This document shows, piece after piece, positions 501 through 34,441 of a stretch of DNA of 64,000 bases. The stretch covers positions 62,001 to 126,000 of IMG/VR virus record IMGVR_UViG_3300031884_000002. One strand, written 5' to 3'. Each line of letters opens with the position of its first letter. Position 1 is the first letter of the stretch. The notes beneath the pieces were generated by a model. That model saw only the letters and a list, made by a program, of their open reading frames with translations. It was not told the DNA's origin and did no database searches. The translations under genes were made by a program, and so were the position numbers.

Positions 501-1115
501 TCATATTTTACATCCTTTATACATTTTCATTTCGTTAAGATTATAATGAAAACTAAAATCTGGTAATGATTTTTCTTTTATTCTATTTAAATACTTAGAA
601 ATTGTGTCAGCGGTGCCACCATCCTTTAAAGTTTCTTTATCTCCAAACGTCATTGCCAGAATATAATGAGACATTGACACGTTAGTATTTCTATTTTTAA
701 ACCCATGAACCACCGTAACATCGGCACCTTTATCTATTGCTTGTTGTATCTCTTTAATAGAGTTTTGTTTAGTTTCTTTTTCAAATTGACTATGATACCA
801 GTTTGCAGTATCCGCAACTGTTCCAAAATCACTATAATTATCTATATAAGTTCCATTCTCATATTCACACGGAAGAAATAATTTAAGATTAGGCATTCTA
901 TTATTAAGATATAATCTTACTGCTATCGAATCTGCGCCAGCCGCACCACCCGATACAAGCGTATTAAGTGGATATTTTTCTTTTAAATTTATATAATCTA
1001 TAAGTTTGTCTGCTACTCTATACATTTCATTATATAAATCAAGTGATAATTTATCATAATCATTATGACGAAATGCCGTTCCAACAATCGCAAGTGAATT
1101 TTCATCTTTTATCAT
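501..1115 (-). CDS. SLOG-superfamily (DprA/YspA-like) nucleotide-binding protein
   Basis: VSGGAAGAD, RN and DGGT motifs typical of SLOG folds. Confidence 0.65.
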   Translation of the reverse strand: MIKDENSLAIVGTAFRHNDYDKLSLDLYNEMYRVADKLIDYINLKEKYPLNTLVSGGAAGADSIAVRLYLNNRMPNLKLFLPCEYENGTYIDNYSDFGTVADTANWYHSQFEKETKQNSIKEIQQAIDKGADVTVVHGFKNRNTNVSMSHYILAMTFGDKETLKDGGTADTISKYLNRIKEKSLPDFSFHYNLNEMKMYKGCKI

Positions 1116-1223: not shown

Positions 1224-2030
1224 ATGAAGACATCAAATATAAATTATAACGAACAACAAACTATCATTTCATATAGTAATAATGGAATGCTAGTAAATGA
1301 TATAGCAAATAAATTAAATAGAAATGAAAAATCTATAAGAAACATTCTTAATAAAAATAAAATTCCAATACACTTCAATGACAAAAGAATTAAAAAATGG
1401 AGCGAACAAAATATAACGACTCTTAAAAATATGGTCCAATCTAATATATCTCATAAACAAATAGCCATAAAATTAAATAGAGGGGTGGCTGCAATATCAA
1501 AAAAATTAAAAGAATTAAATTTAAATTCCAATTTTCTTTTAAAAATAGAAGAAAATAAATGTTTAAAGTCCCAAGGAAAGAAAAAATGTAATGAATGCCA
1601 ACAAATAAAGAATATAAAAGAATTTAAACATTGGTGTAGAAAATGTGAAAATTGCCGAAATTTAATATTACAAAATAGAATTGAAAAAATGTCTAAAAAT
1701 AATGATTTAAAATATATTTTGATGGAAAAATTAAAATGGAATAGATATAGAGTTAAAAAATATAAATTTGAATGTGACATTGACTTACAATTTTTAATAG
1801 AATTATATAATAAACAAAATGGAAAATGTTATTATTCAAATAGAGTAATGTCATTATCTACACATAATGAAAATTCTATTTCGATTGATAGAATAGATTC
1901 TACACAAGGTTATACTAAAAATAATGTTGTATTATGTTGTAATAGAGTAAATTTAATTAAAAACGATATGACAATAGAAAACTTTAAAAATATTATAATA
2001 GATTTATATAATAATATAAATAATTTTTAG
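1224..2030 (+). CDS. HNH-like homing endonuclease with N-terminal HTH repeats
   Basis: CYYS...SIDRIDSTQGYTKNNVVLCC..VN..K C-terminal nuclease motif; CxxC pairs. Confidence 0.75.
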   Translation: MKTSNINYNEQQTIISYSNNGMLVNDIANKLNRNEKSIRNILNKNKIPIHFNDKRIKKWSEQNITTLKNMVQSNISHKQIAIKLNRGVAAISKKLKELNLNSNFLLKIEENKCLKSQGKKKCNECQQIKNIKEFKHWCRKCENCRNLILQNRIEKMSKNNDLKYILMEKLKWNRYRVKKYKFECDIDLQFLIELYNKQNGKCYYSNRVMSLSTHNENSISIDRIDSTQGYTKNNVVLCCNRVNLIKNDMTIENFKNIIIDLYNNINNF

Positions 2031-2044
2031 ATGGAAGTCAATGG

Positions 2045-2287
2045 TTATTTTTTAAACCAGTTACAAATAGAAGGGAATATGATATTGTATATTGGAGTTA
2101 TAATATACAATGTAAAAAGACACACCAAATATACAAAAAATACTATAGGACCAAGTATTAAACATAACAATGCTAATTTAAACTTATTTTTTACATTATC
2201 AGTTATATTTTCCCAAAATATTATGGCAATAACAAGTCCAATTATCATCCATAATGATAAAAAGTCAGATATAATAAAAGGTAACAT
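2045..2287 (-). CDS. small membrane protein
   Basis: Two hydrophobic segments. Confidence 0.5.
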   Translation of the reverse strand: MLPFIISDFLSLWMIIGLVIAIIFWENITDNVKNKFKLALLCLILGPIVFFVYLVCLFTLYIITPIYNIIFPSICNWFKK

Positions 2288-2295
2288 ATCAATAT

Positions 2296-3744
2296 TTAGT
2301 TAGCATTAAAAATATGAGTAGTATAACCAGCACGATAGCCAGCAATATATAATACATGATTATCACTATCGGCGGCATCAACATCACCTTCAAGGTATCG
2401 AGCCGGATTATTATCAATCATATCATTGGCACCGGCTACAAATCCTTCAACAAAATGATTATTATTACTATTTGGAACTCGTTGTAACACCATCTGCTGA
2501 ATAATATAACTAACCACTTGAGCGAAAGTTAATTCTTTATTATTTTCTACTTTTTCGGCTTCTGAATCAGAAATATCAATCTGAAATATTTCTTCCATTG
2601 CCATAAGTAATTCAACGCCATCCAATGAGTCAAGTCCGCATGAATGAATCTTATCAGTTAATTTAATTTCAGGATTAACTCCTAAATCTCCATATAACTG
2701 TTCATGTGTCAAATCCCTAATTTGAGACCATATATTTTCAATAAACAATAAAGGTCTCTTTTCCACCTTGGAAATATGTGCTTCAACGGGAATTGGAGAT
2801 TCAATCGGAAAATTAGTTGTTAATGCATCAATTTCTTCATTGGCTTTCTTTTCAATTTCACAAATACATTCATTGTCTATATTGATAGGAGAAGCACACT
2901 TGCTACAATGACAATTTTCCATTACAGAACCACATCCATCACAATAATCATCTCCAACTGGAGTAGAAGGAACCGTAGTGTTTTCATTATTAAATACCAA
3001 TGGAAGATAATTCTCCAATTCTCCAATTACTTTATATTTACAAATACGATGTTTTTGAAACTCACAGTCCCTTGGAACTGTAACAAAATCTACGGGGTCA
3101 ATTTCAACCAGAATGACTCGTTTTCCATATTCTCTGGCATATTCCAAAGAACCGGCGTGAAGTCCGGGACCACATTCAGTTAAATAATTGTCACATACAG
3201 ATGAACGTTCAACTTCAATCGTGGAGCCAATAGTATTAAGAATACGTCCCTTTTCATCCACTTTACCTTGTAAAACTACAGTTTCGAGATTTCCAGTAAT
3301 AGACCAATAATCTTCATTAACCCCCTTATATGCAATTACAAATCCAGCATCCGTCAAAGTCAATCCCAAATGTTCCATAAATTTATAAGATTCTTCGATT
3401 GCCCTTTGCGATGGATTTTTACGAAGACGTTCAATATAATTGGCAATTGGTTGATAAGGAAATCCCGATTTAAGAAATGCCATAACCCGTTGAGCATCAA
3501 ATGTATTAATATGCCGACCATTATAAGTTACACCGGCAGTATTAACTGAAAGTTTTCCATTTGAATATTCCTCAACAACAGTTTTCATAGAAATCAATCG
3601 TTCAAGCAATTCCTTATTTCCAGCCTTGAATGCGTCTCGCAATTCATTCCATTTTGGATGGTCTGATTTTGCCGTTAGAATCTGTTTCCCATTATCAATA
3701 ATGAGAGTCAATGTTTCGTTAATTAAACTGGATGCGGTAATCAT
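2296..3744 (-). CDS. rIIB: rIIB-like protein fused to a Cys-rich linker and an acyl carrier protein domain
   Basis: rIIB motifs AYKGV, CGPGLHAGSLEYA and VEIDPVDFVTVPRDC..K.R.CKY; ACP motif GLDSLDGVELLMAMEEIFQIDISDSEAE; lies downstream of rIIA. Confidence 0.85.
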   Translation of the reverse strand: MITASSLINETLTLIIDNGKQILTAKSDHPKWNELRDAFKAGNKELLERLISMKTVVEEYSNGKLSVNTAGVTYNGRHINTFDAQRVMAFLKSGFPYQPIANYIERLRKNPSQRAIEESYKFMEHLGLTLTDAGFVIAYKGVNEDYWSITGNLETVVLQGKVDEKGRILNTIGSTIEVERSSVCDNYLTECGPGLHAGSLEYAREYGKRVILVEIDPVDFVTVPRDCEFQKHRICKYKVIGELENYLPLVFNNENTTVPSTPVGDDYCDGCGSVMENCHCSKCASPINIDNECICEIEKKANEEIDALTTNFPIESPIPVEAHISKVEKRPLLFIENIWSQIRDLTHEQLYGDLGVNPEIKLTDKIHSCGLDSLDGVELLMAMEEIFQIDISDSEAEKVENNKELTFAQVVSYIIQQMVLQRVPNSNNNHFVEGFVAGANDMIDNNPARYLEGDVDAADSDNHVLYIAGYRAGYTTHIFNAN

Positions 3745-3768
3745 ATTTTTGTTTTAAGTTTTCAAAGT

Positions 3769-4065
3769 ATATAGGTTATAGATTAAATGTCAAGTATCTT
3801 ATTTAGGTATAACGGTTGCAGTATTGGCATCAGTATCAAACTCTATAGTAATATATTCACCATATCTTACCCATTTATCAGCAAACTCTTCAAGTTCATG
3901 TCTAACATCATCATATGCTTGATGACGCTCTTCATCATCGACAATATTTTGAGTAGCAGAACCAGCAGCATCAATCGCTGATTGATATACTGCATCCGGA
4001 CTTTTGAATGTAACTTTAAACTTCATATGTTCGTATGATATAGGTTATAGATTAAATGTCAAGTA
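3769..4065. repeat. 28-bp direct repeat of promoter sequence flanking the 75-aa gene
   Basis: atataggttatagattaaatgtcaagta at 3769-3796 and 4038-4065. Confidence 0.9.
3799..4026 (-). CDS. hypothetical phage protein
   Basis: ORF with its own promoter at 4035-4062. Confidence 0.7.
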   Translation of the reverse strand: MKFKVTFKSPDAVYQSAIDAAGSATQNIVDDEERHQAYDDVRHELEEFADKWVRYGEYITIEFDTDANTATVIPK

Positions 4066-4286: not shown

Positions 4287-6665
4287 TTAAGCCGTAACTA
4301 ATTCTTCCGGTTGAATATCAACTAAATCAACTACATCGGTTTTAACTGTTTCCGTATATTCATTATATAAATCAATCGACTTGATATATTTTACAAAATT
4401 ATTACGACTAATTTCATTATTGAGTGAACCATTTCTCATATTATGCCAATTAATATAAGGATAGATTTTAATGATTTCATTTTTAATATCTTCAATATTA
4501 ACCGTTGGTTTAATTCCTTTAACAAAATTACACCAAATATAAAGTTGTTGAATAGCATCAATAAATCCAGTTGTATCTTTATTTTTATTAAGAGAAAAAG
4601 AAGTATTAAACAATTTAATCAATACATGATTATCACCTAATTCTTTAGTTAGAAGTTCAGCCTCTTCAATGTTAATAACCGAAGTATCGGCATATTGATT
4701 AACCAAATCTTGAGGATTAATATTGGATGATATACTTTCTACAATAAACTTATCCAGCGGCAACCAAGTTTTATTTTCAATAGCATTCTCAAACCATTTG
4801 GCACCAGCGGTAATACTATCAATAATATAAACCCTCTCAATATCCAAGTTCAATTTATCATTGATAGTTTTAATATATCCCATCACATCACTAACATAGA
4901 TTTCATTATCATTAAACTTGATTTTATTTCCACGAAAATAATTCTTACGTCCACGTTTACTTGGTGCTTTATATAGAAAATAAACGTCTTCATCAATATC
5001 TTTAAATGCAACATCGGACTCTTCAACCTCTTCCGATACAAAATCCATATATTCCATCTTACGAATAACCGAAGTCCAACTACCACCCGAACGAGTTCCT
5101 TTATTAGCAGAATACCAAACCTTGGCATCGGCCAACAAATCGGATAGATTTAGAGTCGGCACAGTATCAAAATTATATTCTTTATAGAATGCAGATTTAA
5201 TATTATTGGTTTCAAAGTTCAATACATGAATAATCTTATATTGATAATTTTTAGAAAATAACAAATACCGCATAACCATAGCCATTCCGCTTCTCTTATT
5301 GGTATCGTTAATAACAACTCCAACCTTATCGGATGCTGTAATTCCATTATAAACATTAGATTTGCATTTAAAAGTTTTAATCCGGTTCTTCTTGGGACGA
5401 TAAGTAGTCATTACTGGAGCATATGGATTATAATCTTTTCCATCAAGGTTGTCCGAAGATAATGCATTATCAAATCGATTAATATGTCTAAAAGAAGCAT
5501 CTGTAATTGGAATACCATTCCAAATAAGTTGTCCCTTCAACGTATCTTCCAATTTAGATAAATTACCAGCCAAGATTTTAATATTATCAATGGCAATACT
5601 GCCATCTTCCGTTTCAATCGGCAAACCACTTCCGAAAATAGAATTATATATTTTCTTTGCTTCCCAGATATTAAAAGCATTGGAAAACTTTTCCTGCACT
5701 GATTCCTTGATTTTGACAATAATATCTTCAATTTTAGAAATTAAAGCCTCCAATGTCAATTTGGAATATTCTAATGCCTCTCTCGAAGGAACAAATTCCA
5801 AATCACCCATTTTATATTTTAAAACTAAATCATTAGAATGAAGCAAATCCAATAAAGCACGGCTCTTACTATCAATCGGCAATTGGTTGGAAATTTTATT
5901 AAAATCCAAGGGGTAAGAAACGTTTCCCATGTAAGCCACCGCAACCGCAGCATATCCAGATTTGGGACGAATTTCCCAACCATCACCTTTCAAGGTGGCT
6001 GGAGTAGTCCTGAATTTATCAATTTGTAATTGATATTCATCATTCAGATTAACGAGTTGAGGAAGCATTTCCCAATATTTAAAATAATTAGCGGCTTCCT
6101 GATGAATATCATACATCATTTCACTTTTAATAGGAATACAAACTTCAATGCCGGTAGGTTCATCAGAAACAATACGAGCCATTTCATAAATTTGAGGAAG
6201 TTTAGTTTTATCTCCCTTAATAATTTGATAAATTGCCTTTTCTCCTTTATTCCAAGAAGTAACTGTCATAGAATCACTTACACATTGAAAAGATTTTGAT
6301 CCAAATCCCCACGAACCATTAAAATCATTGGAATTTCTACGTGTAGATGTTCCCATATTACAATAAATTTTAACAATTTCCTCGGCATTCAATCCAGCAC
6401 CAAAATCTCGGAATTTAAGTGTCAAATCATTATATACAGGCAATGTAACTATAAAATCAGAAATTGGCTTCTTGGCTTCAATATGAGCGTCAAAAGCATT
6501 GTTAGCATATTCCCTCACAACTGCCAATTCTTTCTTGGAATACATTTTATCAGATAGACAATCCATAATTCTGGCTCTCTCAGCAGCATCAAAATCAACT
6601 TGTCCAATAAGTTTTACACCGGAACCATTCGTTTCAATCGTCTGTTGTGTTTCGTTGGATATCAT
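4287..6665 (-). CDS. rIIA: rIIA-like protein (N-terminal GHKL/Hsp90-like ATPase)
   Basis: REYANNAFDAH, RDFGAGL, STRRNSNDFNGSWGFGSKS and PSREALEY motifs; paired with rIIB. Confidence 0.88.
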   Translation of the reverse strand: MISNETQQTIETNGSGVKLIGQVDFDAAERARIMDCLSDKMYSKKELAVVREYANNAFDAHIEAKKPISDFIVTLPVYNDLTLKFRDFGAGLNAEEIVKIYCNMGTSTRRNSNDFNGSWGFGSKSFQCVSDSMTVTSWNKGEKAIYQIIKGDKTKLPQIYEMARIVSDEPTGIEVCIPIKSEMMYDIHQEAANYFKYWEMLPQLVNLNDEYQLQIDKFRTTPATLKGDGWEIRPKSGYAAVAVAYMGNVSYPLDFNKISNQLPIDSKSRALLDLLHSNDLVLKYKMGDLEFVPSREALEYSKLTLEALISKIEDIIVKIKESVQEKFSNAFNIWEAKKIYNSIFGSGLPIETEDGSIAIDNIKILAGNLSKLEDTLKGQLIWNGIPITDASFRHINRFDNALSSDNLDGKDYNPYAPVMTTYRPKKNRIKTFKCKSNVYNGITASDKVGVVINDTNKRSGMAMVMRYLLFSKNYQYKIIHVLNFETNNIKSAFYKEYNFDTVPTLNLSDLLADAKVWYSANKGTRSGGSWTSVIRKMEYMDFVSEEVEESDVAFKDIDEDVYFLYKAPSKRGRKNYFRGNKIKFNDNEIYVSDVMGYIKTINDKLNLDIERVYIIDSITAGAKWFENAIENKTWLPLDKFIVESISSNINPQDLVNQYADTSVINIEEAELLTKELGDNHVLIKLFNTSFSLNKNKDTTGFIDAIQQLYIWCNFVKGIKPTVNIEDIKNEIIKIYPYINWHNMRNGSLNNEISRNNFVKYIKSIDLYNEYTETVKTDVVDLVDIQPEELVTA

Positions 6666-6748: not shown

Positions 6749-7270
6749 TTTATTTATTTTGACTACCTTAATTAAGAATATTAACGAAGACATCGCCAAT
6801 CCCCCGAAATACTCAAAATATCCTTTATTTATTTTGACAGCGGCAATCGCAGAGCAACTGAATACCGATGGAGTCCCCGAAATACTAAAAATATCCTTTA
6901 TTTATTTTGACTCAATTGAAGAACTTGGTAATCCATAAAGATTTACACCCCGAAATACTCAAAATATCATTTATTTATTTTGACATTCGATATTTAAGGT
7001 CCTCAATATCAAGGTCATACCCGAAATACTCAAAATATCCTTTATTTATTTTGACATGATATGGGAGATTAAAAGTAATCTGGCTCCAGTTCCCGAAATA
7101 CTCAAAATATCCTTTATTTATTTTGACTTTATATTCCAGCCTAATGATTTTAATCGATCAATCCCGAAATACTCAAAATATCCTTTATTTATTTTGACCA
7201 ATTGCTCCATTCATATATTAATAAGGGAGTAGTACCCGAAATACTCAAAATATCCTTTATTTATTTTGAC
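6749..7270. CRISPR. CRISPR array 1: 7 full 36-bp repeats plus 1 partial, 7 spacers of 35-39 bp
   Basis: CCCGAAATACTCAAAATATCCTTTATTTATTTTGAC at 6803, 6876, 6949, 7020, 7092, 7163 and 7235 (two copies with single substitutions); partial copy at 6749-6763; internal stem TCAAAATA/TATTTTGA; unique spacers. Confidence 0.98.
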
Positions 7271-7459: not shown

Positions 7460-7639
7460 TTACCATCCTCTACGTTTATTTTGACTACAAAGTTTTTTAT
7501 AATTCAACTCTTCTTCATTGGTTAATCTCCAATATGTAGCCCCCTCTATTCGTTTTTCTCGATGTTTTTTTTCAACAAAGGAATGAGCGTCTCTAAGAAT
7601 ATTATTTTTTATTTCTGTTTTATTTCTTCTGTGTCGCAT
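7460..7639 (-). CDS. 59-aa basic ORF overlapping the effector 3' end (below the ORF-track cutoff)
   Basis: Hand translation MRHRRNKTEIKNNILRDAHSFVEKKHREKRIEGATYWRLTNEEELNYKKLCSQNKRRGW*. Confidence 0.5.
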   Translation of the reverse strand: MRHRRNKTEIKNNILRDAHSFVEKKHREKRIEGATYWRLTNEEELNYKKLCSQNKRRGW

Positions 7640-8973
7640 AATGTAAACACCATACCTCGTGATTCAATGTTATTTTTTAAAGTAGATTTAAACTTGAACC
7701 AAGGGAATTCACCGGCTAATTTAAATCCTTTTGTTGTGTTTAGTACAATTTCATTACAACAAGTTCTTTCGGCGTGTTTACATAACATAGCTACAGTTTG
7801 TTTAATAAAAGCATCGGTTCTTTTTTCAAAATTGTTAGCGACAACTGCTGATTTGCTATTAAAACACGAAACATTCCCAGAACGACGTTCACATTTTCTA
7901 TCCTGTGAAAACCTATCAATATATTCTCTTCTTTTTTCTGACAAATGAACTCCATAATCCTCAGATAAAATTGATTGGAGTTCTTTTAATTTATTTTCTG
8001 GAATATGAGGATATAATTCTTTAACTGTATTAGCATCTAATACTTTGGATAATAATATCTTTTCCTCGGCTACCCATCTGTTAATATTATCTGCGTTATA
8101 CACTTGGAACTTTCTACCACCAACCCACATAGCAAGAAAAGTATCAGGGGCAGTAAATAACATCATTGTTCTATTATTTTTTTTGTCTAAAAGAGAACGT
8201 GGTTGTTTTACTACAATTTTAACTTTATAAGCAGCTTTTTGTTTGTTCCCATTATCATCTCGTTGAGTGATAGTATGATGATGAACTCCTCCTACTCGTT
8301 CACGAACAATCGCACAACTTCCCCATTTAGCATTTCCTTCCATTATTGCTTTCAAGTTTCCATGCTCTCTGCCAAAATTATCACCTCCCGCCAATCTTAA
8401 TTGAATTCTATTATTTATTCTTCCGCATCCAATTACAAATTCTATTACATAAGCAATAGACCCACAAGTATTTAACACTTTTATATCACAAGCCACAGAA
8501 GGTATTTCTAATGGTTGTCCTTCTTTATAGAAGGGTTGATTTTCCCGCCCAAGAAACACAAGCAACTTCTTTTTATTAAATAATTTAGTAATTTTATTCT
8601 GAAGAGTCGATGCGATTACTGATGATGGAATTAAAGGAAATAATTTCCGTGCTTCATTATAAATTTTCTTTTGTAGGGCATTATATTTTTCCTTAGATGG
8701 AGAAACATATTTTTCATCCAATCCACTTTTAACTGGTTCGCTCTTAAACAAGGATGATAACGCCCAATTATGAAACAAATCGTTTTGCTTAAATAATTCA
8801 TCTAATCGAGAATCAACTTCTTTCCATTCCATATTAAGAGGTTCTGCAATAGGTAGGGTAATGGAAAATACATTACTTACAGTATCCGCTGTAAACGCAT
8901 ATGGCTTGGGTTCCTGCCATAGCCAACCATCTCGAAGTTCGAGCAACCCTTTTTTATTTACTTCAAATTTCAT
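7609..8973 (-). CDS. Cas12f/TnpB-like type V effector, predicted nuclease-dead
   Basis: Adjacent to the array. YNEARKLFPLIPSS resembles the in-window TnpB segment YKIKELFPTLPSQ. GRENQPFYKEGQPLEIP and IMEGNAKWGSCAI resemble Cas12f WED/REC segments. RuvC-I position reads MLFTAPD (no IDLG) and RuvC-II reads IVLNTT (no E). FPWFKFKSTLKNNIESRG is followed by the stop, with no Zn finger or RuvC-III. Confidence 0.75.
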   Translation of the reverse strand: MKFEVNKKGLLELRDGWLWQEPKPYAFTADTVSNVFSITLPIAEPLNMEWKEVDSRLDELFKQNDLFHNWALSSLFKSEPVKSGLDEKYVSPSKEKYNALQKKIYNEARKLFPLIPSSVIASTLQNKITKLFNKKKLLVFLGRENQPFYKEGQPLEIPSVACDIKVLNTCGSIAYVIEFVIGCGRINNRIQLRLAGGDNFGREHGNLKAIMEGNAKWGSCAIVRERVGGVHHHTITQRDDNGNKQKAAYKVKIVVKQPRSLLDKKNNRTMMLFTAPDTFLAMWVGGRKFQVYNADNINRWVAEEKILLSKVLDANTVKELYPHIPENKLKELQSILSEDYGVHLSEKRREYIDRFSQDRKCERRSGNVSCFNSKSAVVANNFEKRTDAFIKQTVAMLCKHAERTCCNEIVLNTTKGFKLAGEFPWFKFKSTLKNNIESRGMVFTLCDTEEIKQK

Positions 8974-9860
8974 AACATTAAGGATTTAAGACCTTTATCG
9001 ATTTTATCCAATGGAATATAATCAACCGGACTACTATTAAAATTTACAATTGTTCCATTCGTAATATGATAAACATCAACTTGACTTAAATTTTTATAAG
9101 TTGAAATATATGCAAATCCGTGTTGCCATGCATTGGCACGCCCACCTTTAGTAGCAAATTCCGGAGAAAGATTACATAAACATCCAATCGACCACGACCA
9201 CATAATATCTTTATCTCCCGCTTCATTGATACGATTTCGTTTACTAAAATCTTTATAAGTAATAGCATGACTATCCGCATGAACAACTCTATGATTTTGC
9301 ATCATATATTGAGTTTCACTAAGTCCATTGCCATGCATAACATAGACATCTCCAACTTCATATATTGGACGAATAGAGCCTCCATTCCAAGGAATATAAG
9401 TTATATTAAGTTCTTTCCATATGGAACATTTACGAATACTTATACCATCTCCAAAACTTCGAAGCAAATCATTTTTTCTTAATTCAAATTCGGAACGATA
9501 TTCGTGATTACCTTCGATAAAAATAATTTCAGCATTGGGCACAAACTTACGAATAACACGGAGAAATTCTTTTCCCATATTAAGAGTTTCTTTCCACGCA
9601 GAAAAATGATATTCTCCATCGTCAGTCATAATCAATCCTCCCTTATTTATTTTAGCAGTCCATCCAGAGCACTGTTGATTATCAAACATATCTCCCATAA
9701 TAATAACTCTATCAGCACCATATTTTTTAATAATCTGCATCAATGGAGACAATGCAACTGGATCATGACGGCAATCTGGCAATTTAACCTTTCCATCTAC
9801 TAACAATGCTGCTTGAAGATGTAAATCTGGAATTGTAATTGTTGTCTCTAATTTATTCAT
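8970..9860 (-). CDS. calcineurin-like metallophosphoesterase
   Basis: PDLH, GDMFD and EGNHE motifs; ATGA overlap with the effector start. Confidence 0.85.
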   Translation of the reverse strand: MNKLETTITIPDLHLQAALLVDGKVKLPDCRHDPVALSPLMQIIKKYGADRVIIMGDMFDNQQCSGWTAKINKGGLIMTDDGEYHFSAWKETLNMGKEFLRVIRKFVPNAEIIFIEGNHEYRSEFELRKNDLLRSFGDGISIRKCSIWKELNITYIPWNGGSIRPIYEVGDVYVMHGNGLSETQYMMQNHRVVHADSHAITYKDFSKRNRINEAGDKDIMWSWSIGCLCNLSPEFATKGGRANAWQHGFAYISTYKNLSQVDVYHITNGTIVNFNSSPVDYIPLDKIDKGLKSLML

Positions 9861-11627: not shown

Positions 11628-12812
11628 ATGAATGATGCATCAAAATTAAACCAAAGTCAAGAGAAAGAAGTTATATGGGAAGAAAGAAATTATACAGAAC
11701 CAGAGAAGAATTACTTGAACAGCAACGTGCCAGAGCAAAACGATATTACAACAAAAACAAACAAAGAATATCCGCTGTCAGAATGGCCAATTACTATAAA
11801 GCCAATAAAAAGCGGAATATACAAAATAATAAATAAAATTAATAATAAATATTATGTAGGAAGTGCTAAAAATATAAGAAACAGATGGAAAAAGCACTTT
11901 ACTGATCTAAATACAAATCGACATCCCAACTATCATTTGCAGAGCGCATATAATAAATATGGAAAAGATAGTTTTATTTTTACATTTATAGAAGAAGTCG
12001 AATCTAATAAAAAACTGTTATATAAAGTAGAATATAAATATTTAAGAATTGCTAAAAAAGAAAAACCAAATGTATATAATTTAAGGTTTAAACCGGCTGG
12101 AGGACCAACCGATACATATGGGCGATGGAAAATATCAGAATATAACAAAACAAGAGTATTTACGAAAGAAACAAGAGCAAAAATGTCGGCGGCATTAAAA
12201 AGAAGAAAAGTAACAAACGAAACACGACAAAAACTAAGTGATACTAATAAATTATATTATTCTATACCTGAAAACAGACAAAAACTCATAGAAATGAGTA
12301 AAAAAGTAAATCGGCAGAAAATAGGAATTAAAAATAGAGACAAAACTATATATAAATTTATAAATGTAAATACAGGAGAAATATTCGAAGGAATTAGATA
12401 TGATTTTAGAACAAAATATAACTTAAGGAAAAGCAGTGTTAATGGAGTTATTAAAAAACGAAGAAAGACAGTTAGTGGCTGGAGATTATTTGATAATTCA
12501 TATGTTCCAATTGTCGGAAAAAATAACAAATATAAAAATAAAGAAGAATCAAATTTTTCCAAACGCAAAATTAAAAATAGACCTTCAAAAGAGGAACTTC
12601 TCACAATGATATGGAATAAATCCACAATTCAAATAAGTAATGAGTTTTGCGTGAGCAAAGGAGCAATTAGAAAATGGTGTATAGGATACAATATACCACT
12701 TCCTCCTGTTGGTTATTGGATTAAATTAAAATATGGATATAAAGATGAATGTCTTAAAATAAAAGAAGAACAATTTAAAAAATTTAATCTTGTTTGTAAT
12801 TTTGATTTATAA
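11628..12812 (+). CDS. GIY-YIG homing endonuclease with NUMOD-type repeats
   Basis: SGIYKIINKINNKYYVGSAKNIRNRW and LQSAYNKYG. Confidence 0.92.
   Translation: MNDASKLNQSQEKEVIWEERNYTEPEKNYLNSNVPEQNDITTKTNKEYPLSEWPITIKPIKSGIYKIINKINNKYYVGSAKNIRNRWKKHFTDLNTNRHPNYHLQSAYNKYGKDSFIFTFIEEVESNKKLLYKVEYKYLRIAKKEKPNVYNLRFKPAGGPTDTYGRWKISEYNKTRVFTKETRAKMSAALKRRKVTNETRQKLSDTNKLYYSIPENRQKLIEMSKKVNRQKIGIKNRDKTIYKFINVNTGEIFEGIRYDFRTKYNLRKSSVNGVIKKRRKTVSGWRLFDNSYVPIVGKNNKYKNKEESNFSKRKIKNRPSKEELLTMIWNKSTIQISNEFCVSKGAIRKWCIGYNIPLPPVGYWIKLKYGYKDECLKIKEEQFKKFNLVCNFDL
11675..11836 (+). CDS. overlapping basic peptide MGRKK-1 (53 aa)
   Basis: MGRKKLYRTREELLEQQRARAKRYY...; first 20 aa identical to the paralog at 58580, differing only by synonymous changes. 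Confidence 0.75.
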   Translation: MGRKKLYRTREELLEQQRARAKRYYNKNKQRISAVRMANYYKANKKRNIQNNK

Positions 12813-13779
12813 TTTTCAAAGACCACGATTTTCCAATGCTATTAGAGTAAAATGGAATTATAGGACTTACAACAATTCCTTCGGCTGGTTTATTGTTGGG
12901 ATATAATTGTTTATCGGCGATTTGTCTAAAATATTCTACTGTATGAATGTTTTTATCAAAAACAAACCGGTCAATGAGCGGAACAATAGGAATGTTCAAT
13001 GTATTGCATAAAGTATTTAACTCATCCCAAGTATATAAATTACGAGTATCCAAATCTTTTGCTCTGAATATTCTAAGTTGCCGATCCTTTAATTCTAATC
13101 TGTTTCCATTCAATCCGGTGCCGATAGACTCTGCTTGAATAGCAATATTTTTATTTAATTGAATTAGTTTAGATTTAATATCATATTTATCAACCATTTG
13201 ATATGGAAATCCTTCTCCTTCTTTTAACTTCAGGCGACGACTACAAGCGTCAAATTCGGAATTATTGTAGATAAAAGTAGTGCTACTACCATCCATCTTT
13301 TGGGTTATAACTACTTCTTTACCATCTAATTCCAATAATGCTTCAGGATAACTTAATAAATTGAGTTCATCACTAATGGAAATTAGCGAAGATGGAAATC
13401 CACCTTTAGTTTCTCCATTATTTATAAAAGTCTCCGGTTTTTCATATTTCAATACTCCCAATATAGAAGTAACATCATCCCCAATATTATATTCTCCATT
13501 CGGGAGAATAGACAATGGTTGAACTAACCCGCTTGATGGAGTACCTTTGAACCGAGCATTCCAAACACGATATTTCTGCTTTTCCATGAATTTGAAATTT
13601 TCTGTTGGTGGCACAATACTATCAATCTCAATAAAAACTACCTTATCTCCATTTTTAAATTGTCCCTTGGACACCACAACCGGCCATTCTTTAATTTTAG
13701 CACATTCAAGGCGCAAAACTTCCGGATTTGGATGTGGTGTTATAGAGTGTATAGTTTCTATGTATGCTAATTTACTCAT
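12784..13779 (-). CDS. ATP-dependent RNA ligase, DRB0094-like family
   Basis: N-terminal OB-like segment GDKVVFIEIDS; motif I KMDGSS; EGIVV; KIIN..Y. Confidence 0.88.
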   Translation of the reverse strand: MSKLAYIETIHSITPHPNPEVLRLECAKIKEWPVVVSKGQFKNGDKVVFIEIDSIVPPTENFKFMEKQKYRVWNARFKGTPSSGLVQPLSILPNGEYNIGDDVTSILGVLKYEKPETFINNGETKGGFPSSLISISDELNLLSYPEALLELDGKEVVITQKMDGSSTTFIYNNSEFDACSRRLKLKEGEGFPYQMVDKYDIKSKLIQLNKNIAIQAESIGTGLNGNRLELKDRQLRIFRAKDLDTRNLYTWDELNTLCNTLNIPIVPLIDRFVFDKNIHTVEYFRQIADKQLYPNNKPAEGIVVSPIIPFYSNSIGKSWSLKIINQNYKQD

Positions 13780-14349: not shown

Positions 14350-15537
14350 TCATGATAATCCAATAGATTTAAAAAAGTTTTCCCTATGTAAAATGGAAAA
14401 TAATTCTAATTGTTTAGCATCTTTATTTTGTAAATCATAAATCGGTTGACCTTTTTCATTTTTAATTAAAACAATCTTACCATGTCCAGTATCTTCAATA
14501 GATTTCATTAAACTTCTAACTTTTTGATTATTATTGAATTGAGATTTTAGGCGTCTATTAACATCGGACCAGTTATTCTGATATCTTTCTAATAAACGCC
14601 GAATTAATTCATCGGTAGATGTATCTACAACAATCACATTATTATTACATAGATAATGCATATTACAATCTATAAGCAATGCTCCATTTAGAATAATAAG
14701 TCCTGTTTTACCAGCAATTTGCTTTCTAATTTCTCTAATCATTATAGGCTTATATAAATCTTGTATTTTTTTATTAAAAAAACAATCATTAAATATTGCT
14801 TCCTGTAAATCTAATTTTATAATTTTAAAATATTCAGTCTTATTTTTATCGGATAACATTTCCATCACGGTTTTACGCATATCCATTACTTCAATATTTT
14901 CCTTAAATGTATCGCCATATGTTAAATTATATGCAATTTTATCCATATCTATATGAGTAACTGGTAAATTAGAATACCCATCAATCAATAACTGAGTTAT
15001 ATAAGATTTACCACAACCAATGGTGCCGGTAACTCCGATAATATATTGTTGATTTATTTTAATTTCCAATAATTGCTTGGCCGATAAAGAAACATAATCC
15101 CTAACATCGCCATTGTATTTAATCAATTCTTTGGCGGCTGATGAACTAATTTTAGCATCAATCGGATTAGAAAATAAAACACAAGTATCAACTCCGTTTT
15201 CCTGTGCCACCGTTACTTCGTGTAACATTCGTTCATATTCCGTATCTTTAATATCCCGAATACCTTTAATAATAGTAACAATACCTTTGGAACGAGCATA
15301 ATCGCTAACTAATTGATTATCAGGGAGAACATCAACTTCAAACTCGGTTGATAATAAAGAAGGCAGAGCACTATAAATAAGTCCAATCCGTTCTTCAATA
15401 TTAAATGTATATTTTTTAGCAGGATTATTCGCCACTAAAACAACCACCTTGTCAAACATTTTTAGTGCTCGCTTAACAATGTTGGCGTGTCCCTCGTGAA
15501 AACAATCAAAACTTCCAGCGTAAATACAAGATTTCAT
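14350..15537 (-). CDS. coaD: bifunctional phosphopantetheine adenylyltransferase / dephospho-CoA kinase (CoaD-CoaE fusion)
   Basis: YAGSFDCFHEGH, KGIR...EYE and ISSSAAKEL, followed by a P-loop IIGVTGTIGCGKS and IDMDKIA. Confidence 0.85.
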   Translation of the reverse strand: MKSCIYAGSFDCFHEGHANIVKRALKMFDKVVVLVANNPAKKYTFNIEERIGLIYSALPSLLSTEFEVDVLPDNQLVSDYARSKGIVTIIKGIRDIKDTEYERMLHEVTVAQENGVDTCVLFSNPIDAKISSSAAKELIKYNGDVRDYVSLSAKQLLEIKINQQYIIGVTGTIGCGKSYITQLLIDGYSNLPVTHIDMDKIAYNLTYGDTFKENIEVMDMRKTVMEMLSDKNKTEYFKIIKLDLQEAIFNDCFFNKKIQDLYKPIMIREIRKQIAGKTGLIILNGALLIDCNMHYLCNNNVIVVDTSTDELIRRLLERYQNNWSDVNRRLKSQFNNNQKVRSLMKSIEDTGHGKIVLIKNEKGQPIYDLQNKDAKQLELFSILHRENFFKSIGLS

Positions 15538-31228: not shown

Positions 31229-31930
31229 ATGAGAACAAAAATTATAGGAATTTATAAATTAACATCACCATCAGGAAAAAGTTATATTGGTCAAAGTAGA
31301 GATATTATCATGCGGTTTCGTGGTCATAAATCAGACACGAAAAGAAAACATCAAAAATTATACTATGGTATTAGAAAATATGGATATGAAAATTTTACCA
31401 AAGAAATTTTAGAAGAATGTTCAATGGATGTATTGGATAAAAGAGAAGTTTACTGGATTGATTATTACGACTCCATTAATAATGGTTACAATTGTGATGT
31501 TGGTGGACAAATTCATAAAGCATTTAGTGCGGAACACATAGAAAAAATAAGACAAGCAGCCATAAAGCAAAATGCCGAAGGTAGGGGAGCACCAACTATA
31601 GAATTTTACATTGATGATGTCCTTTACAAATCTATAAGTGATGCTAGTAAAAAATTAGGTATACCTCATAAAACAGTTCATAACAGATTAAATTCTCCAA
31701 ATTTAAAATATGCTAATTATAGATATGCCGATGTAAGTAAAATACCAAATAGGGAACTTCGGGTGTGGCAATCAAAAACAGCAATGGTAAACGGTATAAT
31801 ATATAATTCTGCTTCTGATGCGTCCATAAAAACCGGAATAAATTTTTGCACATTATGCAGATGGCTACGAAATAATACCAATAATTGTTATTATATTGCA
31901 ACCGGAGCAGTTAAAACAGGACCACTTTGA
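31229..31930 (+). CDS. GIY-YIG homing endonuclease with NUMOD1-like repeats
   Basis: GIYKLTSPSGKSYIGQS; start at MRTK after TATTTATA. Confidence 0.9.
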   Translation: MRTKIIGIYKLTSPSGKSYIGQSRDIIMRFRGHKSDTKRKHQKLYYGIRKYGYENFTKEILEECSMDVLDKREVYWIDYYDSINNGYNCDVGGQIHKAFSAEHIEKIRQAAIKQNAEGRGAPTIEFYIDDVLYKSISDASKKLGIPHKTVHNRLNSPNLKYANYRYADVSKIPNRELRVWQSKTAMVNGIIYNSASDASIKTGINFCTLCRWLRNNTNNCYYIATGAVKTGPL

Positions 31931-32760
31931 TAATTGATAAGTTCTGTATCAACATATTCCCAATCAAATATAGAAGTGAATTTCTCGGTTTTTATAGTTG
32001 GCAATTTATAAATAGGGCGAGTTAGCAATTCTCTTACTTGAGTTAAATGATTTGCATATAAATGAACATCCCACAAAAATCCAACTAGTTTACCTTCTTT
32101 TAAGCTGGATTCTTTTGCAAGTAAGTGTAAGAGAAGACCATAGCTGCTTGCGTTTGCGGGAAAACCCAAAAAAGTATCCACCGAACGTTGTGTCCAAGCA
32201 AGATTTAATTCACCATCAATTACAGATAATCTAAATCCATCGTGACACGGCGGCAAACTCATATAGTTTAATGCCAATGGATTCCACGCAGATACAATCA
32301 TTCTTCTATCCATTGGATTTTTCTTTAATGTATCAACAACATTTTGCAACTGGTCAATTCCATTCTCCATGCTCCAATCAGAATGGGGGTCATGAAAATC
32401 CCTCCACTGGGTTCCATATATTAATCCCAAATCATCTTCTGCCGCCATCTTCACTTTGGTTGCGTCATCATTACCATATGGAACTCGGCTCGGGTTGCAC
32501 CATCCATCCCAATAATGACATCCCCTGTCTTGGAGCCATTTTTTACTTCTTAATCCTTTGATGAAGAATTCCAGTTCTACTTTAGTAGATTTGAATGGTA
32601 ATTTCCGACTCGTCAATAAAGGAAACCCCTCAGCCATATCATGCTCGAACATAAACCCCGCAATGGTAAGACAATCAACTCCTGTGCGATTGCCTTTCCA
32701 TTTACCTTCGGTTAGTATCTTATTTAATAATCTAAAATATTCTTTATCTGTATTATTCAT
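31891..32760 (-). CDS. thyA: thymidylate synthase
   Basis: RTG, FPLLT, YGTQWR, DRRMIVSAWNP, LPPCH, QRSVD and HLYANH. Confidence 0.98.
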   Translation of the reverse strand: MNNTDKEYFRLLNKILTEGKWKGNRTGVDCLTIAGFMFEHDMAEGFPLLTSRKLPFKSTKVELEFFIKGLRSKKWLQDRGCHYWDGWCNPSRVPYGNDDATKVKMAAEDDLGLIYGTQWRDFHDPHSDWSMENGIDQLQNVVDTLKKNPMDRRMIVSAWNPLALNYMSLPPCHDGFRLSVIDGELNLAWTQRSVDTFLGFPANASSYGLLLHLLAKESSLKEGKLVGFLWDVHLYANHLTQVRELLTRPIYKLPTIKTEKFTSIFDWEYVDTELINYQSGPVLTAPVAI

Positions 32761-32772
32761 AGTTTTTATTTT

Positions 32773-33249
32773 TTAATGTAATTCTCTTTCATAATATCTT
32801 ATAACTTTAGCATTGTCAAACTCTTTTATTATTTCTTGTTTATTAAATAAATGTTCGAACTCAAACATAAATGTATCTCCTTCATATTCTTTATCTATCA
32901 GAGTAACATAAAACTCTTTAATATCAGGCATACATAACTTATATGTATCTCTGCCACCGGCTACAATAGAATCTTGAGGTATAATATTCAGTTTAGAAGT
33001 AGGAATGTAATGATACATAGTAGAAGTTTCACATATAGCACCGGCACCTTCTTTTATAGAGTTGGATAATACCCATATAGTTCTATTTTTTAGAGCCGGA
33101 AGTTTCTCATATGTTTTTCTTCCAATTACAATAGATTTATTTAAAGTAAACTCTTTAAACCATTTAAAATCTTCTTTTATTGGACTCCATGGTAATTTTC
33201 CATCTTTACCTATACACCGATTTTTAGACATCGCCATTATCGCTAACAT
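32773..33249 (-). CDS. folA: dihydrofolate reductase
   Basis: IGKDGKLPW, DFKWFKEFT, GRKT, L.NR, AGG and GDTF. Confidence 0.96.
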   Translation of the reverse strand: MLAIMAMSKNRCIGKDGKLPWSPIKEDFKWFKEFTLNKSIVIGRKTYEKLPALKNRTIWVLSNSIKEGAGAICETSTMYHYIPTSKLNIIPQDSIVAGGRDTYKLCMPDIKEFYVTLIDKEYEGDTFMFEFEHLFNKQEIIKEFDNAKVIRYYERELH

Positions 33250-34441
33250 AAATTATTTAAAACTTTCTTCTAATCCACTAATTTCATCCGTTGCATAATG
33301 ACTATCTAATTCTTGTAAATAATTATATTTAGGAGTATTATGTATTTCATCAGTTATTTGATTTCTAATATTAACTGCTTCTTTTAAGACGGAATCTATA
33401 AAGTGTTGGTCGGGAGGTTGTCCTATCCAGCAAGTTCTTACATTGCGTCTTCCTAAAATCTGATTTCGAGCACAATAACTCGATGATAAAAACCAATGAA
33501 TATAACCATCATTGGAATTAAAATCTCTATCTATATATGGACTTATATTATAAAACATAACCACTTTATCAGTATGACCGGCATTAACTCCTTGTATATA
33601 TTTCCATGCTTTGGCTAATGCTTCTTTGGCAGTGTAATATTTATTATCATTCATAATTTTTATATTTAGATATATTCATTAAGTGACGTTTTCTGTTCTT
33701 TAGTTAACGGTTTCATTACACAATTTTTTTCGTGGTCTGGTTCTGAACTCTTAATTACATTTTTTCCACACCAGTAACACTCATATTCGGTTACTTTTTG
33801 CGCTTCAATTAGACGTTGTTTTAATTTATCAAGGTTTATAGGCATAAATTATTTTTAGGTGTTAAGTCTATATAAACGTGTTTTTCTTCAGTATAATGTG
33901 AATTATCACACCACCAAATCCAAGGATTATCCATATCTTGGGTCATTTGTTGAAAACACAAAGGACAATATTGTTGATTATCCATTTTTCAAATAGGGAT
34001 AAATTGCTTTTTGCTGTATATCTCCACCGGTTTCTTCGATTGGATAAAATTTATCTTTCTCTAAGGTTATAGTTTGGTCTCTGTCAGTCATTATACCAAG
34101 TTTTCCATTCCGTTCAACTAATTTTATTTCGACTATGCCAACGCTTAATAAGGTATTCCATATTTTTCGTAATTCTTCATCAACTGGCATATAAGGAGGA
34201 GAATACCATAATTCTTCCATATGAGGTTTTTCTATATGATTATCCAATTCATCAAATAATCCCGTATTACTCCGTTTTTTAATACGAGCAGCATCGTCCG
34301 AAGTAAATGGCTCTATAAAAACTAAATCTTTTTTATCTTTAAAGTTAAAATTAGATGAAGTTCCATCAAATAATCCTGTCTTACTCCATTTTTTAATTAA
34401 TCGTATGGATAATTCTTCGTTAGTTTCATTATTATTTTCGT

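What the first reader, a model, noticed from the sequence alone, without database searches (positions are those of the whole stretch)
2296..3744. rIIB fused to an acyl carrier protein domain
Seen: an rIIB core, a Cys-rich linker (CDGC...CHCSKC...CIC), then an ACP with an intact DSL serine (about 2490-2740) and a short C-terminal domain. Known: the DSL serine is the phosphopantetheine attachment site, and T4 RIIA/RIIB are membrane-associated and counter Rex exclusion. Inference: acylation-dependent anchoring or regulation of the rII complex, or an ACP decoy for host ACP-binding proteins. I do not know of this fusion being described.
Basis: partly seen in the sequence, partly recalled or inferred. 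Interest (0 to 1): 0.75.

Follow-up and report, generated by a model that had tools for sequence, protein, structure and literature searches.

The report
rIIB protein carrying an ACP cassette
A 354-kb uncultured lake-water phage encodes a real, recurrent version of the classic rIIB counter-defence protein that carries an acyl-carrier-protein domain plus a conserved short tail, which gives a new experimental handle on the 70-year-old question of what rII proteins bind.

Summary
Window 2296..3744 (minus strand) is one intact 482-aa gene with four parts:
- rIIB core, aa 1-245
- acidic Cys-rich linker
- AcpP-like ACP, aa 333-422, with Ser373 in GLDSLD
- conserved two-helix tail, aa 423-482

It is not a chimera: independent assemblies from other studies span it without differences. 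84 of the 120 closest relatives, from four data sources, have the same order of parts.

New here: ACP+tail is a portable cassette. It also occurs on proteins without an rIIB core. It was gained or lost at least 16 times on the rIIB tree. 19% of copies lack the serine, mostly replaced by Glu or Asp. The complete phage genome has no PPTase and no acyl-loading or acyl-using enzyme. A nearby CoaD-CoaE gene showed no association with ACPs (0 of 34 records).

Best reading (inferred, confidence 0.4): an AcpP-mimicking adaptor, probably made holo by the host AcpS, that docks rIIB onto an ACP-recognising partner rather than carrying acyl groups for synthesis. I found no paper describing it, and no cultured phage has it. 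It is a new variant of a known kind.

Side finding: between rIIA and an orphan 454-aa ORF lies a genuine-looking CRISPR array. Relatives of that ORF carry arrays too, with spacer turnover at one end. It deserves its own follow-up.

The parts
2296..3744 (-). Whole rIIB-ACP gene, 482 aa plus stop codon at 2296-2298
   Evidence: The ORF is. It is identical to P0001, which is seen on 16 contigs. Independent contigs span it.
3010..3744 (-). rIIB core, aa 1-245, including a conserved Cys/His cluster (C191, H196, C227, C235)
   Evidence: PHROG 609 E=1.6e-48. PF26926. BFVD rIIB matches with E down to 1e-21. Invariant columns are listed.
2749..3009 (-). Acidic linker, aa 246-332, pI 4.4, disordered in the metal-free model
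   Evidence: pLDDT is below 50 for aa 247-264, 281-304 and 306-331.
2860..2943 (-). Cys cluster, aa 268-295: one canonical CxxC-x6-CxC unit (C268, C271, C278, C280) plus C283, C293 and C295. It is probably a zinc knuckle.
   Evidence: The unit recurs 0-4 times, with a period of 16 aa, in relatives. The consensus is D-x-C-x-x-C-G-x5-C-x-C. Metal binding is inferred.
2479..2748 (-). AcpP-like acyl carrier protein domain, aa 333-422
   Evidence: Pfam PP-binding is above the gathering score. The best curated model is AcpP TIGR00517, 46.9 bits, below the equivalog cut-off of 70.45.
2626..2628 (-). Codon of Ser373, the predicted 4'-phosphopantetheine attachment site at the start of helix II
   Evidence: Translation gives CGLDSLDGV. 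Helix II spans aa 373-387 in the model. The column is Ser in 68 of 84 relatives.
2299..2478 (-). Conserved C-terminal tail, aa 423-482: two helices with the motifs GxxxG...PKYLxGDxxGADSxxHAxYIxGYxxGY. It has no known family.
   Evidence: It is present in 114 of 120 relatives, with or without the ACP. pLDDT is 83-90. There is no Pfam, Atlas or PDB match.
3766..3793 (-). Promoter-like site TTGACA-N16-TATACT, 24 nt upstream of the ATG
   Evidence: It matches 11 of 12 consensus positions. A near-identical 28-nt copy lies about 9 kb away in the same contig (table 8). This is a consensus match only.
4287..6665 (-). rIIA, 792 aa, the upstream partner gene of the operon
   Evidence: PHROG 612 E=8e-80. 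rIIA lies directly upstream of rIIB in 72 of 78 related loci.
3799..4026 (-). Conserved 75-aa ORF between rIIA and rIIB, function unknown
   Evidence: A clear homologue of 77 aa sits at the same place in the closest relative, L003. It matches no family.
2045..2287 (-). 80-aa hydrophobic ORF starting 8 nt after the rIIB stop codon, probably co-transcribed. It is a possible membrane partner.
   Evidence: Sequence. It has no detectable homology to the small membrane ORF downstream of rIIB in L003, so the link is weak.

Best explanation
This is a genuine, modular rIIB of an uncultured 354-kb freshwater jumbo phage. A portable two-part cassette sits behind the rIIB core on a flexible, probably zinc-stiffened, acidic linker. 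The cassette is an ACP derived from the housekeeping AcpP type plus a conserved 50-60-aa helical tail.

I propose that the cassette works as an interaction adaptor, not as a biosynthetic carrier. The steps would be:
1. The host AcpS recognises the AcpP-like helix II.
2. AcpS uses host or phage-boosted CoA to convert Ser373 to the holo form.
3. The acidic helix-II face with its phosphodiester, together with the tail, docks rIIB, and through it the rIIA/rIIB counter-defence module, onto a protein that normally recognises ACP. That partner could be a membrane-proximal lipid-synthesis enzyme or a defence component.

Shown: the architecture, the fold, the conservation pattern, the mobility of the cassette, and the absence of phage PPTase and acyl enzymes.
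Inferred: the modification by host AcpS, the docking, and the identity of the partner.
For: - The gene is real and recurrent. The order core, ACP, tail holds in 75 of 76 cases.
- The ACP is AcpP-like over the whole domain. Its best PDB and NCBIfam matches are AcpP and mitochondrial ACP. The family consensus LGxDSLDxVELxMALEEEFxxEIPDEDAEK reproduces the helix II-III recognition surface seen in the H. pylori AcpP alignment.
- Conservation across 84 copies: D372 79, L374 78, D375 79, E378 79, Ser373 68. The recognition residues are under stronger constraint than the attachment site.
- 11 of the 16 serine replacements are Glu or Asp, and serine was lost at least 9 separate times. By the genetic code Ser to Glu or Asp needs at least 2 base changes. 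That argues for selection for a negative charge where the phosphodiester would sit.
- The complete genome (CheckV 100%) has a single PP-binding domain, no PPTase, no adenylating enzyme, no PlsC-type acyltransferase and no ketosynthase.
- ACP+tail also occurs on complete proteins without an rIIB core: P0125 (DUF6980-ACP-tail), P0126, P0143, P0160 and P0170, plus P0130, P0132, P0135 and P0162, which keep only the first 40 aa or so of rIIB.
- Divergent rII modules are experimentally shown to be counter-defence modules against RexAB (PMC11879866).
Against: - There is no direct evidence of phosphopantetheinylation or of any partner.
- The host is unknown: the repeat-based host search failed.
- The cassette was gained or lost at least 16 times, and 36 of 120 relatives lack the ACP, so it is dispensable for core rIIB function.
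- The controlled complex prediction of rIIA with ACP+tail gave no answer.
- pTM of ACP+tail is only 0.62, so a fixed joint surface is not established.
- Ser is still kept in 81% of copies, which a pure surface-mimic model does not require and which a true carrier model also explains.
Confidence: 0.4

Rival explanations
1. True acyl carrier. Ser373 is phosphopantetheinylated and acylated by host enzymes. The acyl group anchors or regulates the rII complex at the membrane, or is delivered to a lipid target.
For: - Ser is kept in 68 of 84 copies despite only 30-38% identity across the domain.
- It is AcpP-like, so host FAS enzymes could load it.
- The phage encodes an intact CoaD-CoaE 10.6 kb away, and CoA is the phosphopantetheine donor.
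- Niemi et al. 2026 suggest envelope-related roles for ACP modules of freshwater Flavobacterium jumbophages (PMC13573597).
Against: - The phage has no loading or transfer enzyme.
- 19% of copies lack the serine.
- By established knowledge AcpP-type ACPs sequester the acyl chain inside the bundle rather than exposing it as a membrane anchor.
- CoaD/CoaDE shows no association with ACPs: 0 of 34 CoaD-encoding virus records have a PP-binding domain or a PPTase. G009 has CoaDE with an ACP-less rIIB.
Confidence: 0.2
2. Modification-independent decoy. The domain mimics apo or holo AcpP only by its surface. It sequesters or blocks a host protein that binds ACP, for example a defence or toxin component, with no need for the prosthetic group.
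For: - Recognition-helix residues (94%) are more conserved than the serine (81%), and serine was lost at least 9 independent times.
- The cassette is reused on unrelated N-termini in neighbourhoods rich in HD, Macro, NUDIX and PP2C genes, which are typical of host takeover or counter-defence.
- The domain is strongly acidic, pI 4.25.
Against: - A serine kept in 81% of copies, and the bias of its replacements to Glu or Asp, suggest the phosphorylated state matters.
- No candidate target is known.
- A decoy would not obviously need to be tethered to rIIB or to the tail.
Confidence: 0.2
3. Passenger or spacer. The ACP is a stable, soluble helical module that was picked up by recombination. It serves only as a spacer or solubility tag between the linker and the functionally important tail.
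For: - Gain and loss are frequent (at least 16 events).
- The tail occurs without the ACP in 30 relatives.
- Close relatives such as L003 (68% identical core) carry entirely different C-termini.
Against: - The AcpP surface motif is kept nearly invariant across 84 diverged copies.
- The ACP always sits immediately before the tail.
- The pair travels together onto other proteins.
Confidence: 0.1
4. Assembly chimera or mis-called ORF.
For: None was found.
Against: - Contigs from four runs, including other studies, span all junctions with 0 differences.
- At least 18 runs hold the stretch.
- 84 relatives from ENA, JGI, Logan and NCBI share the architecture.
Confidence: 0.01

Closest known systems
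T4 RIIB / Pfam Phage_T4_rIIB (PF26926), PHROG 609
   Same: The core at aa 1-245 matches by profile and by fold. It lies directly downstream of rIIA, as in most rII modules. The family is shown to counter RexAB even at under 40% identity (PMC11879866).
   Different: Cultured-phage rIIB proteins match only the first 50-57% of this protein. None has the Cys-knuckle linker, the ACP or the tail.
RB43-type RIIA-RIIB single polypeptide
   Same: It is another natural fusion within the rII module, which shows that rII parts are recombined as domains.
   Different: That fusion joins the two rII partners. This one adds a domain of cellular lipid metabolism to the C-terminus of rIIB.
Bacterial housekeeping AcpP (type II fatty-acid synthesis ACP)
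   Same: It is a four-helix bundle with DSL(D) at the start of helix II and acidic helices II-III. It is 30-36% identical to AcpP, and the best curated model is TIGR00517 over positions 4-73 of 77.
   Different: It scores below the equivalog cut-off (46.9 against 70.45). It is embedded in a 482-aa phage protein. 19% of family members lack the serine. No partner enzymes are encoded in the genome.
Stand-alone ACPs of cultured jumbo phages (GAP32, phiRSL1, fHe-Yen9-04, BCSR5, pf16) and the 'Host-interface island' ACPs of Flavobacterium jumbophages (Niemi et al. 2026)
   Same: They are phage-encoded ACPs of unknown role and are common in large phages. The island combines ACPs with an HD phosphohydrolase, and the stand-alone ACP+tail genes P0125 and P0130 also sit beside HD genes.
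   Different: The cultured-phage ACPs match only the ACP part, not the tail. None is fused to rIIB. I could not check whether the Flavobacterium phage ACPs carry the tail, because those genomes are not in the collection.
Mitochondrial ACP as a structural subunit (complex I, ISD11/LYR complexes) and AcpP bound to MukB
   Same: These are precedents for an AcpP-type ACP used as a protein-interaction module rather than as a carrier in synthesis. Such entries are among the closest sequence and fold matches.
   Different: This is a functional analogy only. No LYR-type partner was detected here.
Carrier domain followed by a C-terminal docking domain in NRPS/PKS subunits (for example PDB 7b2b)
   Same: A carrier domain is followed by a short helical extension that mediates non-covalent docking. 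7b2b aligned over model residues 3-138, Z 8.9.
   Different: The match is weak and carried mostly by the carrier fold. There are no synthetase domains anywhere in the genome.

Membership tests
Phage_T4_rIIB (PF26926 / PHROG 609) | Significant profile match to the rIIB core | tested here: met
   phrog_609 E=1.6e-48 over aa 11-245, plus four further rIIB PHROGs. PF26926 is precomputed for P0001 and is named.
Phage_T4_rIIB (PF26926 / PHROG 609) | Same fold as known rIIB proteins | tested here: met
   The top 31 BFVD matches are rIIB proteins, E 1e-21 to 1e-6. Examples are phage ME3 RIIB (TMt 0.71, rmsd 3.3 A over 254 columns) and the RB43 RIIA-RIIB.
Phage_T4_rIIB (PF26926 / PHROG 609) | Encoded next to rIIA in one operon | tested here: met
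   rIIA (phrog_612, 8e-80) lies at 4287..6665 on the same strand. rIIA is directly upstream of rIIB in 72 of 78 related loci.
Phage_T4_rIIB (PF26926 / PHROG 609) | Protects against Rex-type exclusion | not testable with these tools
   This needs infection or heterologous assays. Divergent rII pairs do so in E. coli (PMC11879866).
Acyl carrier protein / PP-binding (PF00550) | Profile match above Pfam's gathering score | tested here: met
   29.2 bits against 20.8. 30.7 bits in the genome scan.
Acyl carrier protein / PP-binding (PF00550) | Four-helix carrier fold | tested here: met
   pLDDT is about 93. TM 0.75-0.83 and rmsd about 2.2 A to solved ACPs. Z 9-11 over 73-83 residues.
Acyl carrier protein / PP-binding (PF00550) | Serine of the D-S-L motif at the N-terminus of helix II | tested here: met
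   Ser373 in GLDSLDGV. Helix II spans aa 373-387. The family-wide figure is 68 of 84.
Acyl carrier protein / PP-binding (PF00550) | Covalent 4'-phosphopantetheine on that serine | not testable with these tools
   This needs mass spectrometry after AcpS or Sfp treatment, or from infected cells.
Housekeeping AcpP equivalog (TIGR00517) | Score above the curated equivalog cut-off | tested here: not met
   46.9 bits against 70.45 for the window's copy, and 53-64 bits for four relatives. Only P0121 reaches the subfamily model NF002148 (71.5 against 71). It is AcpP-derived, not an AcpP.
Self-contained phage acyl or polyketide pathway | Cognate PPTase and loading or condensing enzymes in the same genome | tested here: not met
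   PF01648, PF00501, PF01553 and PF00109 are all absent above cut-off in the complete genome. The weak ACPS hit lies in an unrelated 133-aa ORF. Three other fusion-bearing records have none either, but they are incomplete.

The most novel reading that the evidence does not exclude
The ACP+tail cassette is a previously unrecognised phage adaptor that plugs counter-defence proteins into the host's ACP interaction network. The proteins concerned are rIIB in most cases, and DUF6980 or other N-termini elsewhere. On this reading rII-type protection in these phages works by sensing or blocking an ACP-dependent, membrane-proximal host process. The holo phosphodiester, mimicked by Glu or Asp in some lineages, would be the recognition element. 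This would give the first molecular partner class for an rII protein.
Probability: 0.2. Interest if true: 0.8.

Novelty: new variant of a known kind. Interest (0 to 1): 0.55.

Why it matters
rIIA and rIIB have been genetic classics since Benzer, yet their biochemical partners are still unknown. A natural, repeatedly selected fusion works as a Rosetta stone. It says that in a large clade of environmental jumbo phages rIIB works side by side with an AcpP look-alike and a conserved docking-like tail.

That turns a vague question into concrete experiments:
- Is Ser373 modified?
- What binds the cassette?
- Does deleting it change protection against abortive-infection systems?

It also defines ACP+tail as a mobile phage module, which may explain the many unexplained ACP genes in large phages.

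Tried and rejected
1. Phage-encoded PPTase. The only ACPS signal (12.5 bits) lies in a 133-aa ORF at 33253..33654 beside ThyA and DHFR, without AcpS motifs. I rejected it as chance.
2. CoaD-CoaE (14350..15537) as a dedicated supplier for the ACP. I rejected it as a specific link: 0 of 34 CoaD-encoding virus records have a PP-binding domain or a PPTase, and two CoaDE phages have ACP-less rIIB.
3. rIIA docking of ACP+tail. The complex prediction scored 0.00 and gave no answer, so it is not used as evidence either way.
4. Identity of the tail. There is no Pfam, PHROG or NCBIfam hit. The ESM Atlas scored 0.62 or less. Structure searches matched only the ACP part.
5. Conserved small membrane ORF downstream of rIIB as a partner. 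It has no homology to the ORF at the same place in L003.
6. Host identification through the CRISPR-like repeat gave three single chance hits and no arrays. There are no tRNAs in the window.
7. AlphaFold DB Swiss-Prot search for the core returned only ACPs. BFVD was needed.
8. My first single-sequence labelling missed six divergent ACPs. I corrected it with the family profile. The IQ-TREE counts (at least 14 forced changes) used the old labels. The FastTree recount with corrected labels gives at least 16.
9. For the side finding: Rfam, a self-genome spacer search, a viral-contig repeat search, one metagenome protospacer search, PDB sequence search, and the Pfam TnpB profiles on the 454-aa ORF all came back empty.
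Full report
**1. What is there**

Window 2296..3744 on the minus strand is one uninterrupted ORF of 482 aa. It has four parts.

- rIIB core. Residues 11-245 match rIIB families (phrog_609 E=1.6e-48). The protein carries Pfam's Phage_T4_rIIB (PF26926) in the precomputed tables. In the viral structure library the 31 best matches of the predicted model are rIIB proteins (E 1e-21 to 1e-6), including the RB43 RIIA-RIIB protein and the ME3 RIIB (TMt 0.71, rmsd 3.3 A).
- Linker. Residues 246-332 are acidic (pI 4.4).
- ACP. Residues 333-422 are an acyl carrier protein.
  - Pfam PP-binding scores 29.2 bits against a gathering score of 20.8.
  - The model shows a four-helix bundle with pLDDT about 93.
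  - TM is 0.75-0.83 and rmsd about 2.2 A to solved AcpP-type ACPs at 30-36% identity, and Z is 9-11 in an independent aligner.
  - Ser373 sits in GLDSLDGV at the start of helix II, nt 2626-2628.
- Tail. Residues 423-482 form a confident two-helix tail (pLDDT 83-90).

The gene has its own promoter-like site, TTGACA-N16-TATACT, 24 nt upstream. It follows rIIA (792 aa, phrog_612 8e-80) and two small ORFs.

**2. It is not an artefact**

- The stretch is held by at least 18 lake or freshwater metagenome runs.
- A 1697-nt contig from a different study spans 2145-3841 with no difference. Another contig spans 2225-3495, and two 19.7-kb contigs span the whole region.
- The genome is a 353,772-bp virus record judged 100% complete.

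**3. It is a family, and the family is modular**

A search of 5.8 billion proteins found 177 relatives, of which the best 120 were listed. With a profile of the C-terminal region:

| Architecture | Relatives (of 120) |
|---|---|
| ACP + tail | 84 |
| Tail only | 30 |
| Neither | 6 |

- The order core, ACP, tail holds in 75 of 76 cases.
- The linker holds 0-4 copies of a 16-aa CxxC-x6-CxC unit. That looks like a variable string of zinc knuckles. Metal binding is inferred.
- On a tree of the rIIB core, presence of the ACP needs at least 16 changes, against a shuffled mean of 31. The earlier IQ-TREE run with cruder labels forced at least 14.
- Close relatives differ. L003 has a 68% identical core, no ACP and an unrelated repeat-bearing C-terminus.
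- An exhaustive profile search of 1.84 billion representatives showed that ACP+tail also occurs on complete, Met-started proteins without an rIIB core.
  - Some carry unrelated N-termini: P0125 (DUF6980-ACP-tail, on a 312-kb contig among HD, Macro, NUDIX and PP2C genes), P0126, P0143, P0160 and P0170.
  - Others keep only the first 40 aa or so of rIIB: P0130, P0132, P0135 and P0162.

So ACP+tail is a mobile cassette, and rIIB is its most frequent carrier.

**4. What kind of ACP**

- The best sequence matches among solved structures are bacterial AcpP (H. pylori, E. coli and others) and mitochondrial ACPs.
- The best curated model in all five members tested is the housekeeping AcpP (TIGR00517/PRK00982), covered almost end to end. 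It scores below the equivalog cut-off: 46.9 against 70.45 for the window's copy.
- The family consensus of helices II-III, LGxDSLDxVELxMALEEEFxxEIPDEDAEK, is the AcpP recognition surface.

It is therefore AcpP-derived. It is not an AcpP equivalog, and it is not a PKS/NRPS-type carrier.

**5. Evidence bearing on mechanism**

- (a) The complete genome has no PPTase, no adenylating enzyme, no PlsC-type acyltransferase, no ketosynthase and no second carrier domain. Any modification must come from the host, and there is no phage pathway for the domain to serve.
- (b) Conservation across the 84 ACPs:

| Position | Conserved copies (of 84) |
|---|---|
| D372 | 79 |
| L374 | 78 |
| D375 | 79 |
| E378 | 79 |
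| Ser373 | 68 |

  - The other 16 copies have Glu (9), Asp (2), Met (3, one degenerate clade), Leu (1) and Tyr (1). Serine was lost at least 9 separate times.
  - Among 19 further cassette proteins, 16 keep Ser, 2 have Glu and 1 has Ile (sequences).
  - Ser to Glu or Asp needs at least two base changes by the genetic code. The acidic bias therefore suggests selection for a negative charge where the phosphodiester of the prosthetic group would sit.
  - The pattern fits a module whose job is recognition by a partner: the surface is more constrained than the site, the site is usually kept, and it is otherwise replaced by a charge mimic. It does not fit thioester chemistry in every lineage.
- (c) A fused CoaD-CoaE with intact HxGH, ISST and P-loop motifs lies 10.6 kb away at 14350..15537.
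  - This looked like a supplier of the phosphopantetheine donor, but the association failed the test.
  - None of 34 CoaD-encoding virus records has a PP-binding domain or a PPTase.
  - Two CoaDE-bearing relatives have ACP-less rIIB.
- (d) A controlled complex prediction of rIIA with ACP+tail gave no answer. I do not count it either way.
- (e) The tail has no detectable relatives outside this cassette.

**6. Explanation and rivals**

I commit, at 0.4, to an adaptor model. The host AcpS makes the domain holo. The acidic helix-II face plus the tail dock rIIB onto an ACP-recognising partner, as part of the rII counter-defence function. That function is experimentally established for divergent rII pairs (PMC11879866).

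The rivals are:

| Rival | Confidence | Main point |
|---|---|---|
| True acyl carrier or anchor | 0.2 | Favoured by serine retention. Disfavoured by missing enzymes, serine-less members and the buried acyl chain of AcpP-type ACPs. |
| Modification-independent decoy | 0.2 | Fits the surface conservation and repeated serine loss. |
| Passenger or spacer | 0.1 | Fits frequent gain and loss. |
| Chimera | 0.01 | Refuted. |

**7. Comparison with what is known, and novelty**

- No record among 50,697 cultured-phage genomes covers more than 57% of the protein.
- The cassette finds only stand-alone ACPs there, never the tail.
- No BFVD model matches both parts.
- Full-text searches found no description of an rIIB-ACP fusion.
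- The closest published observation is the 'Host-interface island' of freshwater Flavobacterium jumbophages, with duplicated ACPs and an HD phosphohydrolase (PMC13573597). P0125 and P0130 also sit next to HD genes.
- The architecture is visible in automatic annotations, so it is unrecognised rather than unseen.

I rate it a new variant of a known kind, with interest 0.55.

**8. Noticed outside the finding**

The 467-nt stretch 6803-7270, between rIIA and an orphan 454-aa ORF (7609..8973), is a CRISPR-type array. It has seven 36-nt repeats with at most one mismatch, where shuffles give none, and six unique 35-37-nt spacers.

- The ORF family has only five members. All three relatives whose DNA could be read carry a downstream array of 36-nt repeats.
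- The repeats differ in their internal hairpin and share the 3' end TTCGGG.
- All are preceded by the same metallophosphoesterase gene.
- Two samples with the identical protein share the four distal spacers and differ in all proximal ones. That is the signature of polarised spacer acquisition.
- The ORF resembles TnpB/Cas12f only at the level of language-model features (0.96). Pfam TnpB profiles, NCBIfam and PDB sequences do not hit it.

This may be an undescribed compact phage CRISPR effector and deserves a separate evaluation.

Noticed in passing
window 6803-7270 (array); 7609..8973 (-) 454-aa ORF; 8970..9860 (-) 296-aa metallophosphoesterase; relatives L126, L127, L129: A CRISPR-type array has seven 36-nt repeats, GTCAAAATAAATAAAGGATATTTTGAGTATTTCGGG on the gene strand, and six unique 35-37-nt spacers. 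It lies directly downstream of an orphan 454-aa ORF. The gene order metallophosphoesterase, ORF, array is conserved in all three relatives with readable DNA: repeats are 36 nt, end in TTCGGG, and have different hairpins. Two samples with the identical protein share 4 distal spacers and differ in all proximal ones, which indicates polarised acquisition. The ORF has no Pfam, NCBIfam or PDB sequence match. ESM Atlas features point to TnpB/Cas12f (0.96), which is unverified. No cas1 or cas2 was seen, and no protospacer was found. It may be a new compact phage CRISPR effector.
   Followed up: partly
window 14350..15537 (-): A 395-aa bifunctional CoaD-CoaE covers the last two steps of coenzyme A synthesis and has intact catalytic motifs. 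Fused homologues occur in about a dozen IMG/VR contigs, many of them jumbo-sized. It shows no association with ACP or PPTase genes (0 of 34 records).
   Followed up: yes
genome G000; domain hits in the window at about 29577-30113 (+), 46783-47331 (-) and 55853-56443 (-): The phage genome holds six canonical TnpB-like ORFs of 334-442 aa (OrfB_IS605 plus Cas12f1-like_TNB), three of them inside the window. That is an unusual load of IS605/OMEGA-type elements for a phage.
   Followed up: no
window 3010-3744 (-), rIIB core residues C191, H196, C227, C235: A Cys/His cluster (C191-x4-H196 ... C227 ... C235, with extra Cys at 229 and 234 in relatives) and the GLHAGS motif are invariant or nearly so across 60 relatives. 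This suggests a metal site or active site in the rIIB core itself.
   Followed up: no
window 1224..2030 (+) and 11628..12812 (+): Two homing-endonuclease-like genes lie on the opposite strand to their neighbours. One is an HNH/endonuclease VII-like ORF right after the rIIB operon. The other is a GIY-YIG group I intron-type endonuclease beside an RNA ligase at 12784..13779.
   Followed up: no
window 3766-3793 (-) and a second copy about 9 kb away, outside the window: The 28-nt promoter-like sequence upstream of rIIB recurs with 2 differences elsewhere in the same contig. Similar TTGACA-N16 sites precede the 75-aa ORF (4062-4035). This is probably a shared phage promoter motif.
   Followed up: partly
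L003:6001-7098 (+), the closest IMG/VR relative: This rIIB has a 68% identical core and lacks both ACP and tail. Instead it ends in two copies of a motif SKFANDSH-x-KRD-x-G-x-FIK of unknown nature. This illustrates rapid swapping of rIIB C-termini.
   Followed up: no
window 501..1115 (-), 31891..32760 (-), 32773..33249 (-): The window also holds a SLOG/DprA-like 204-aa ORF next to the rII region, and a thymidylate synthase and dihydrofolate reductase pair. These are ordinary jumbo-phage nucleotide-metabolism genes.
   Followed up: no
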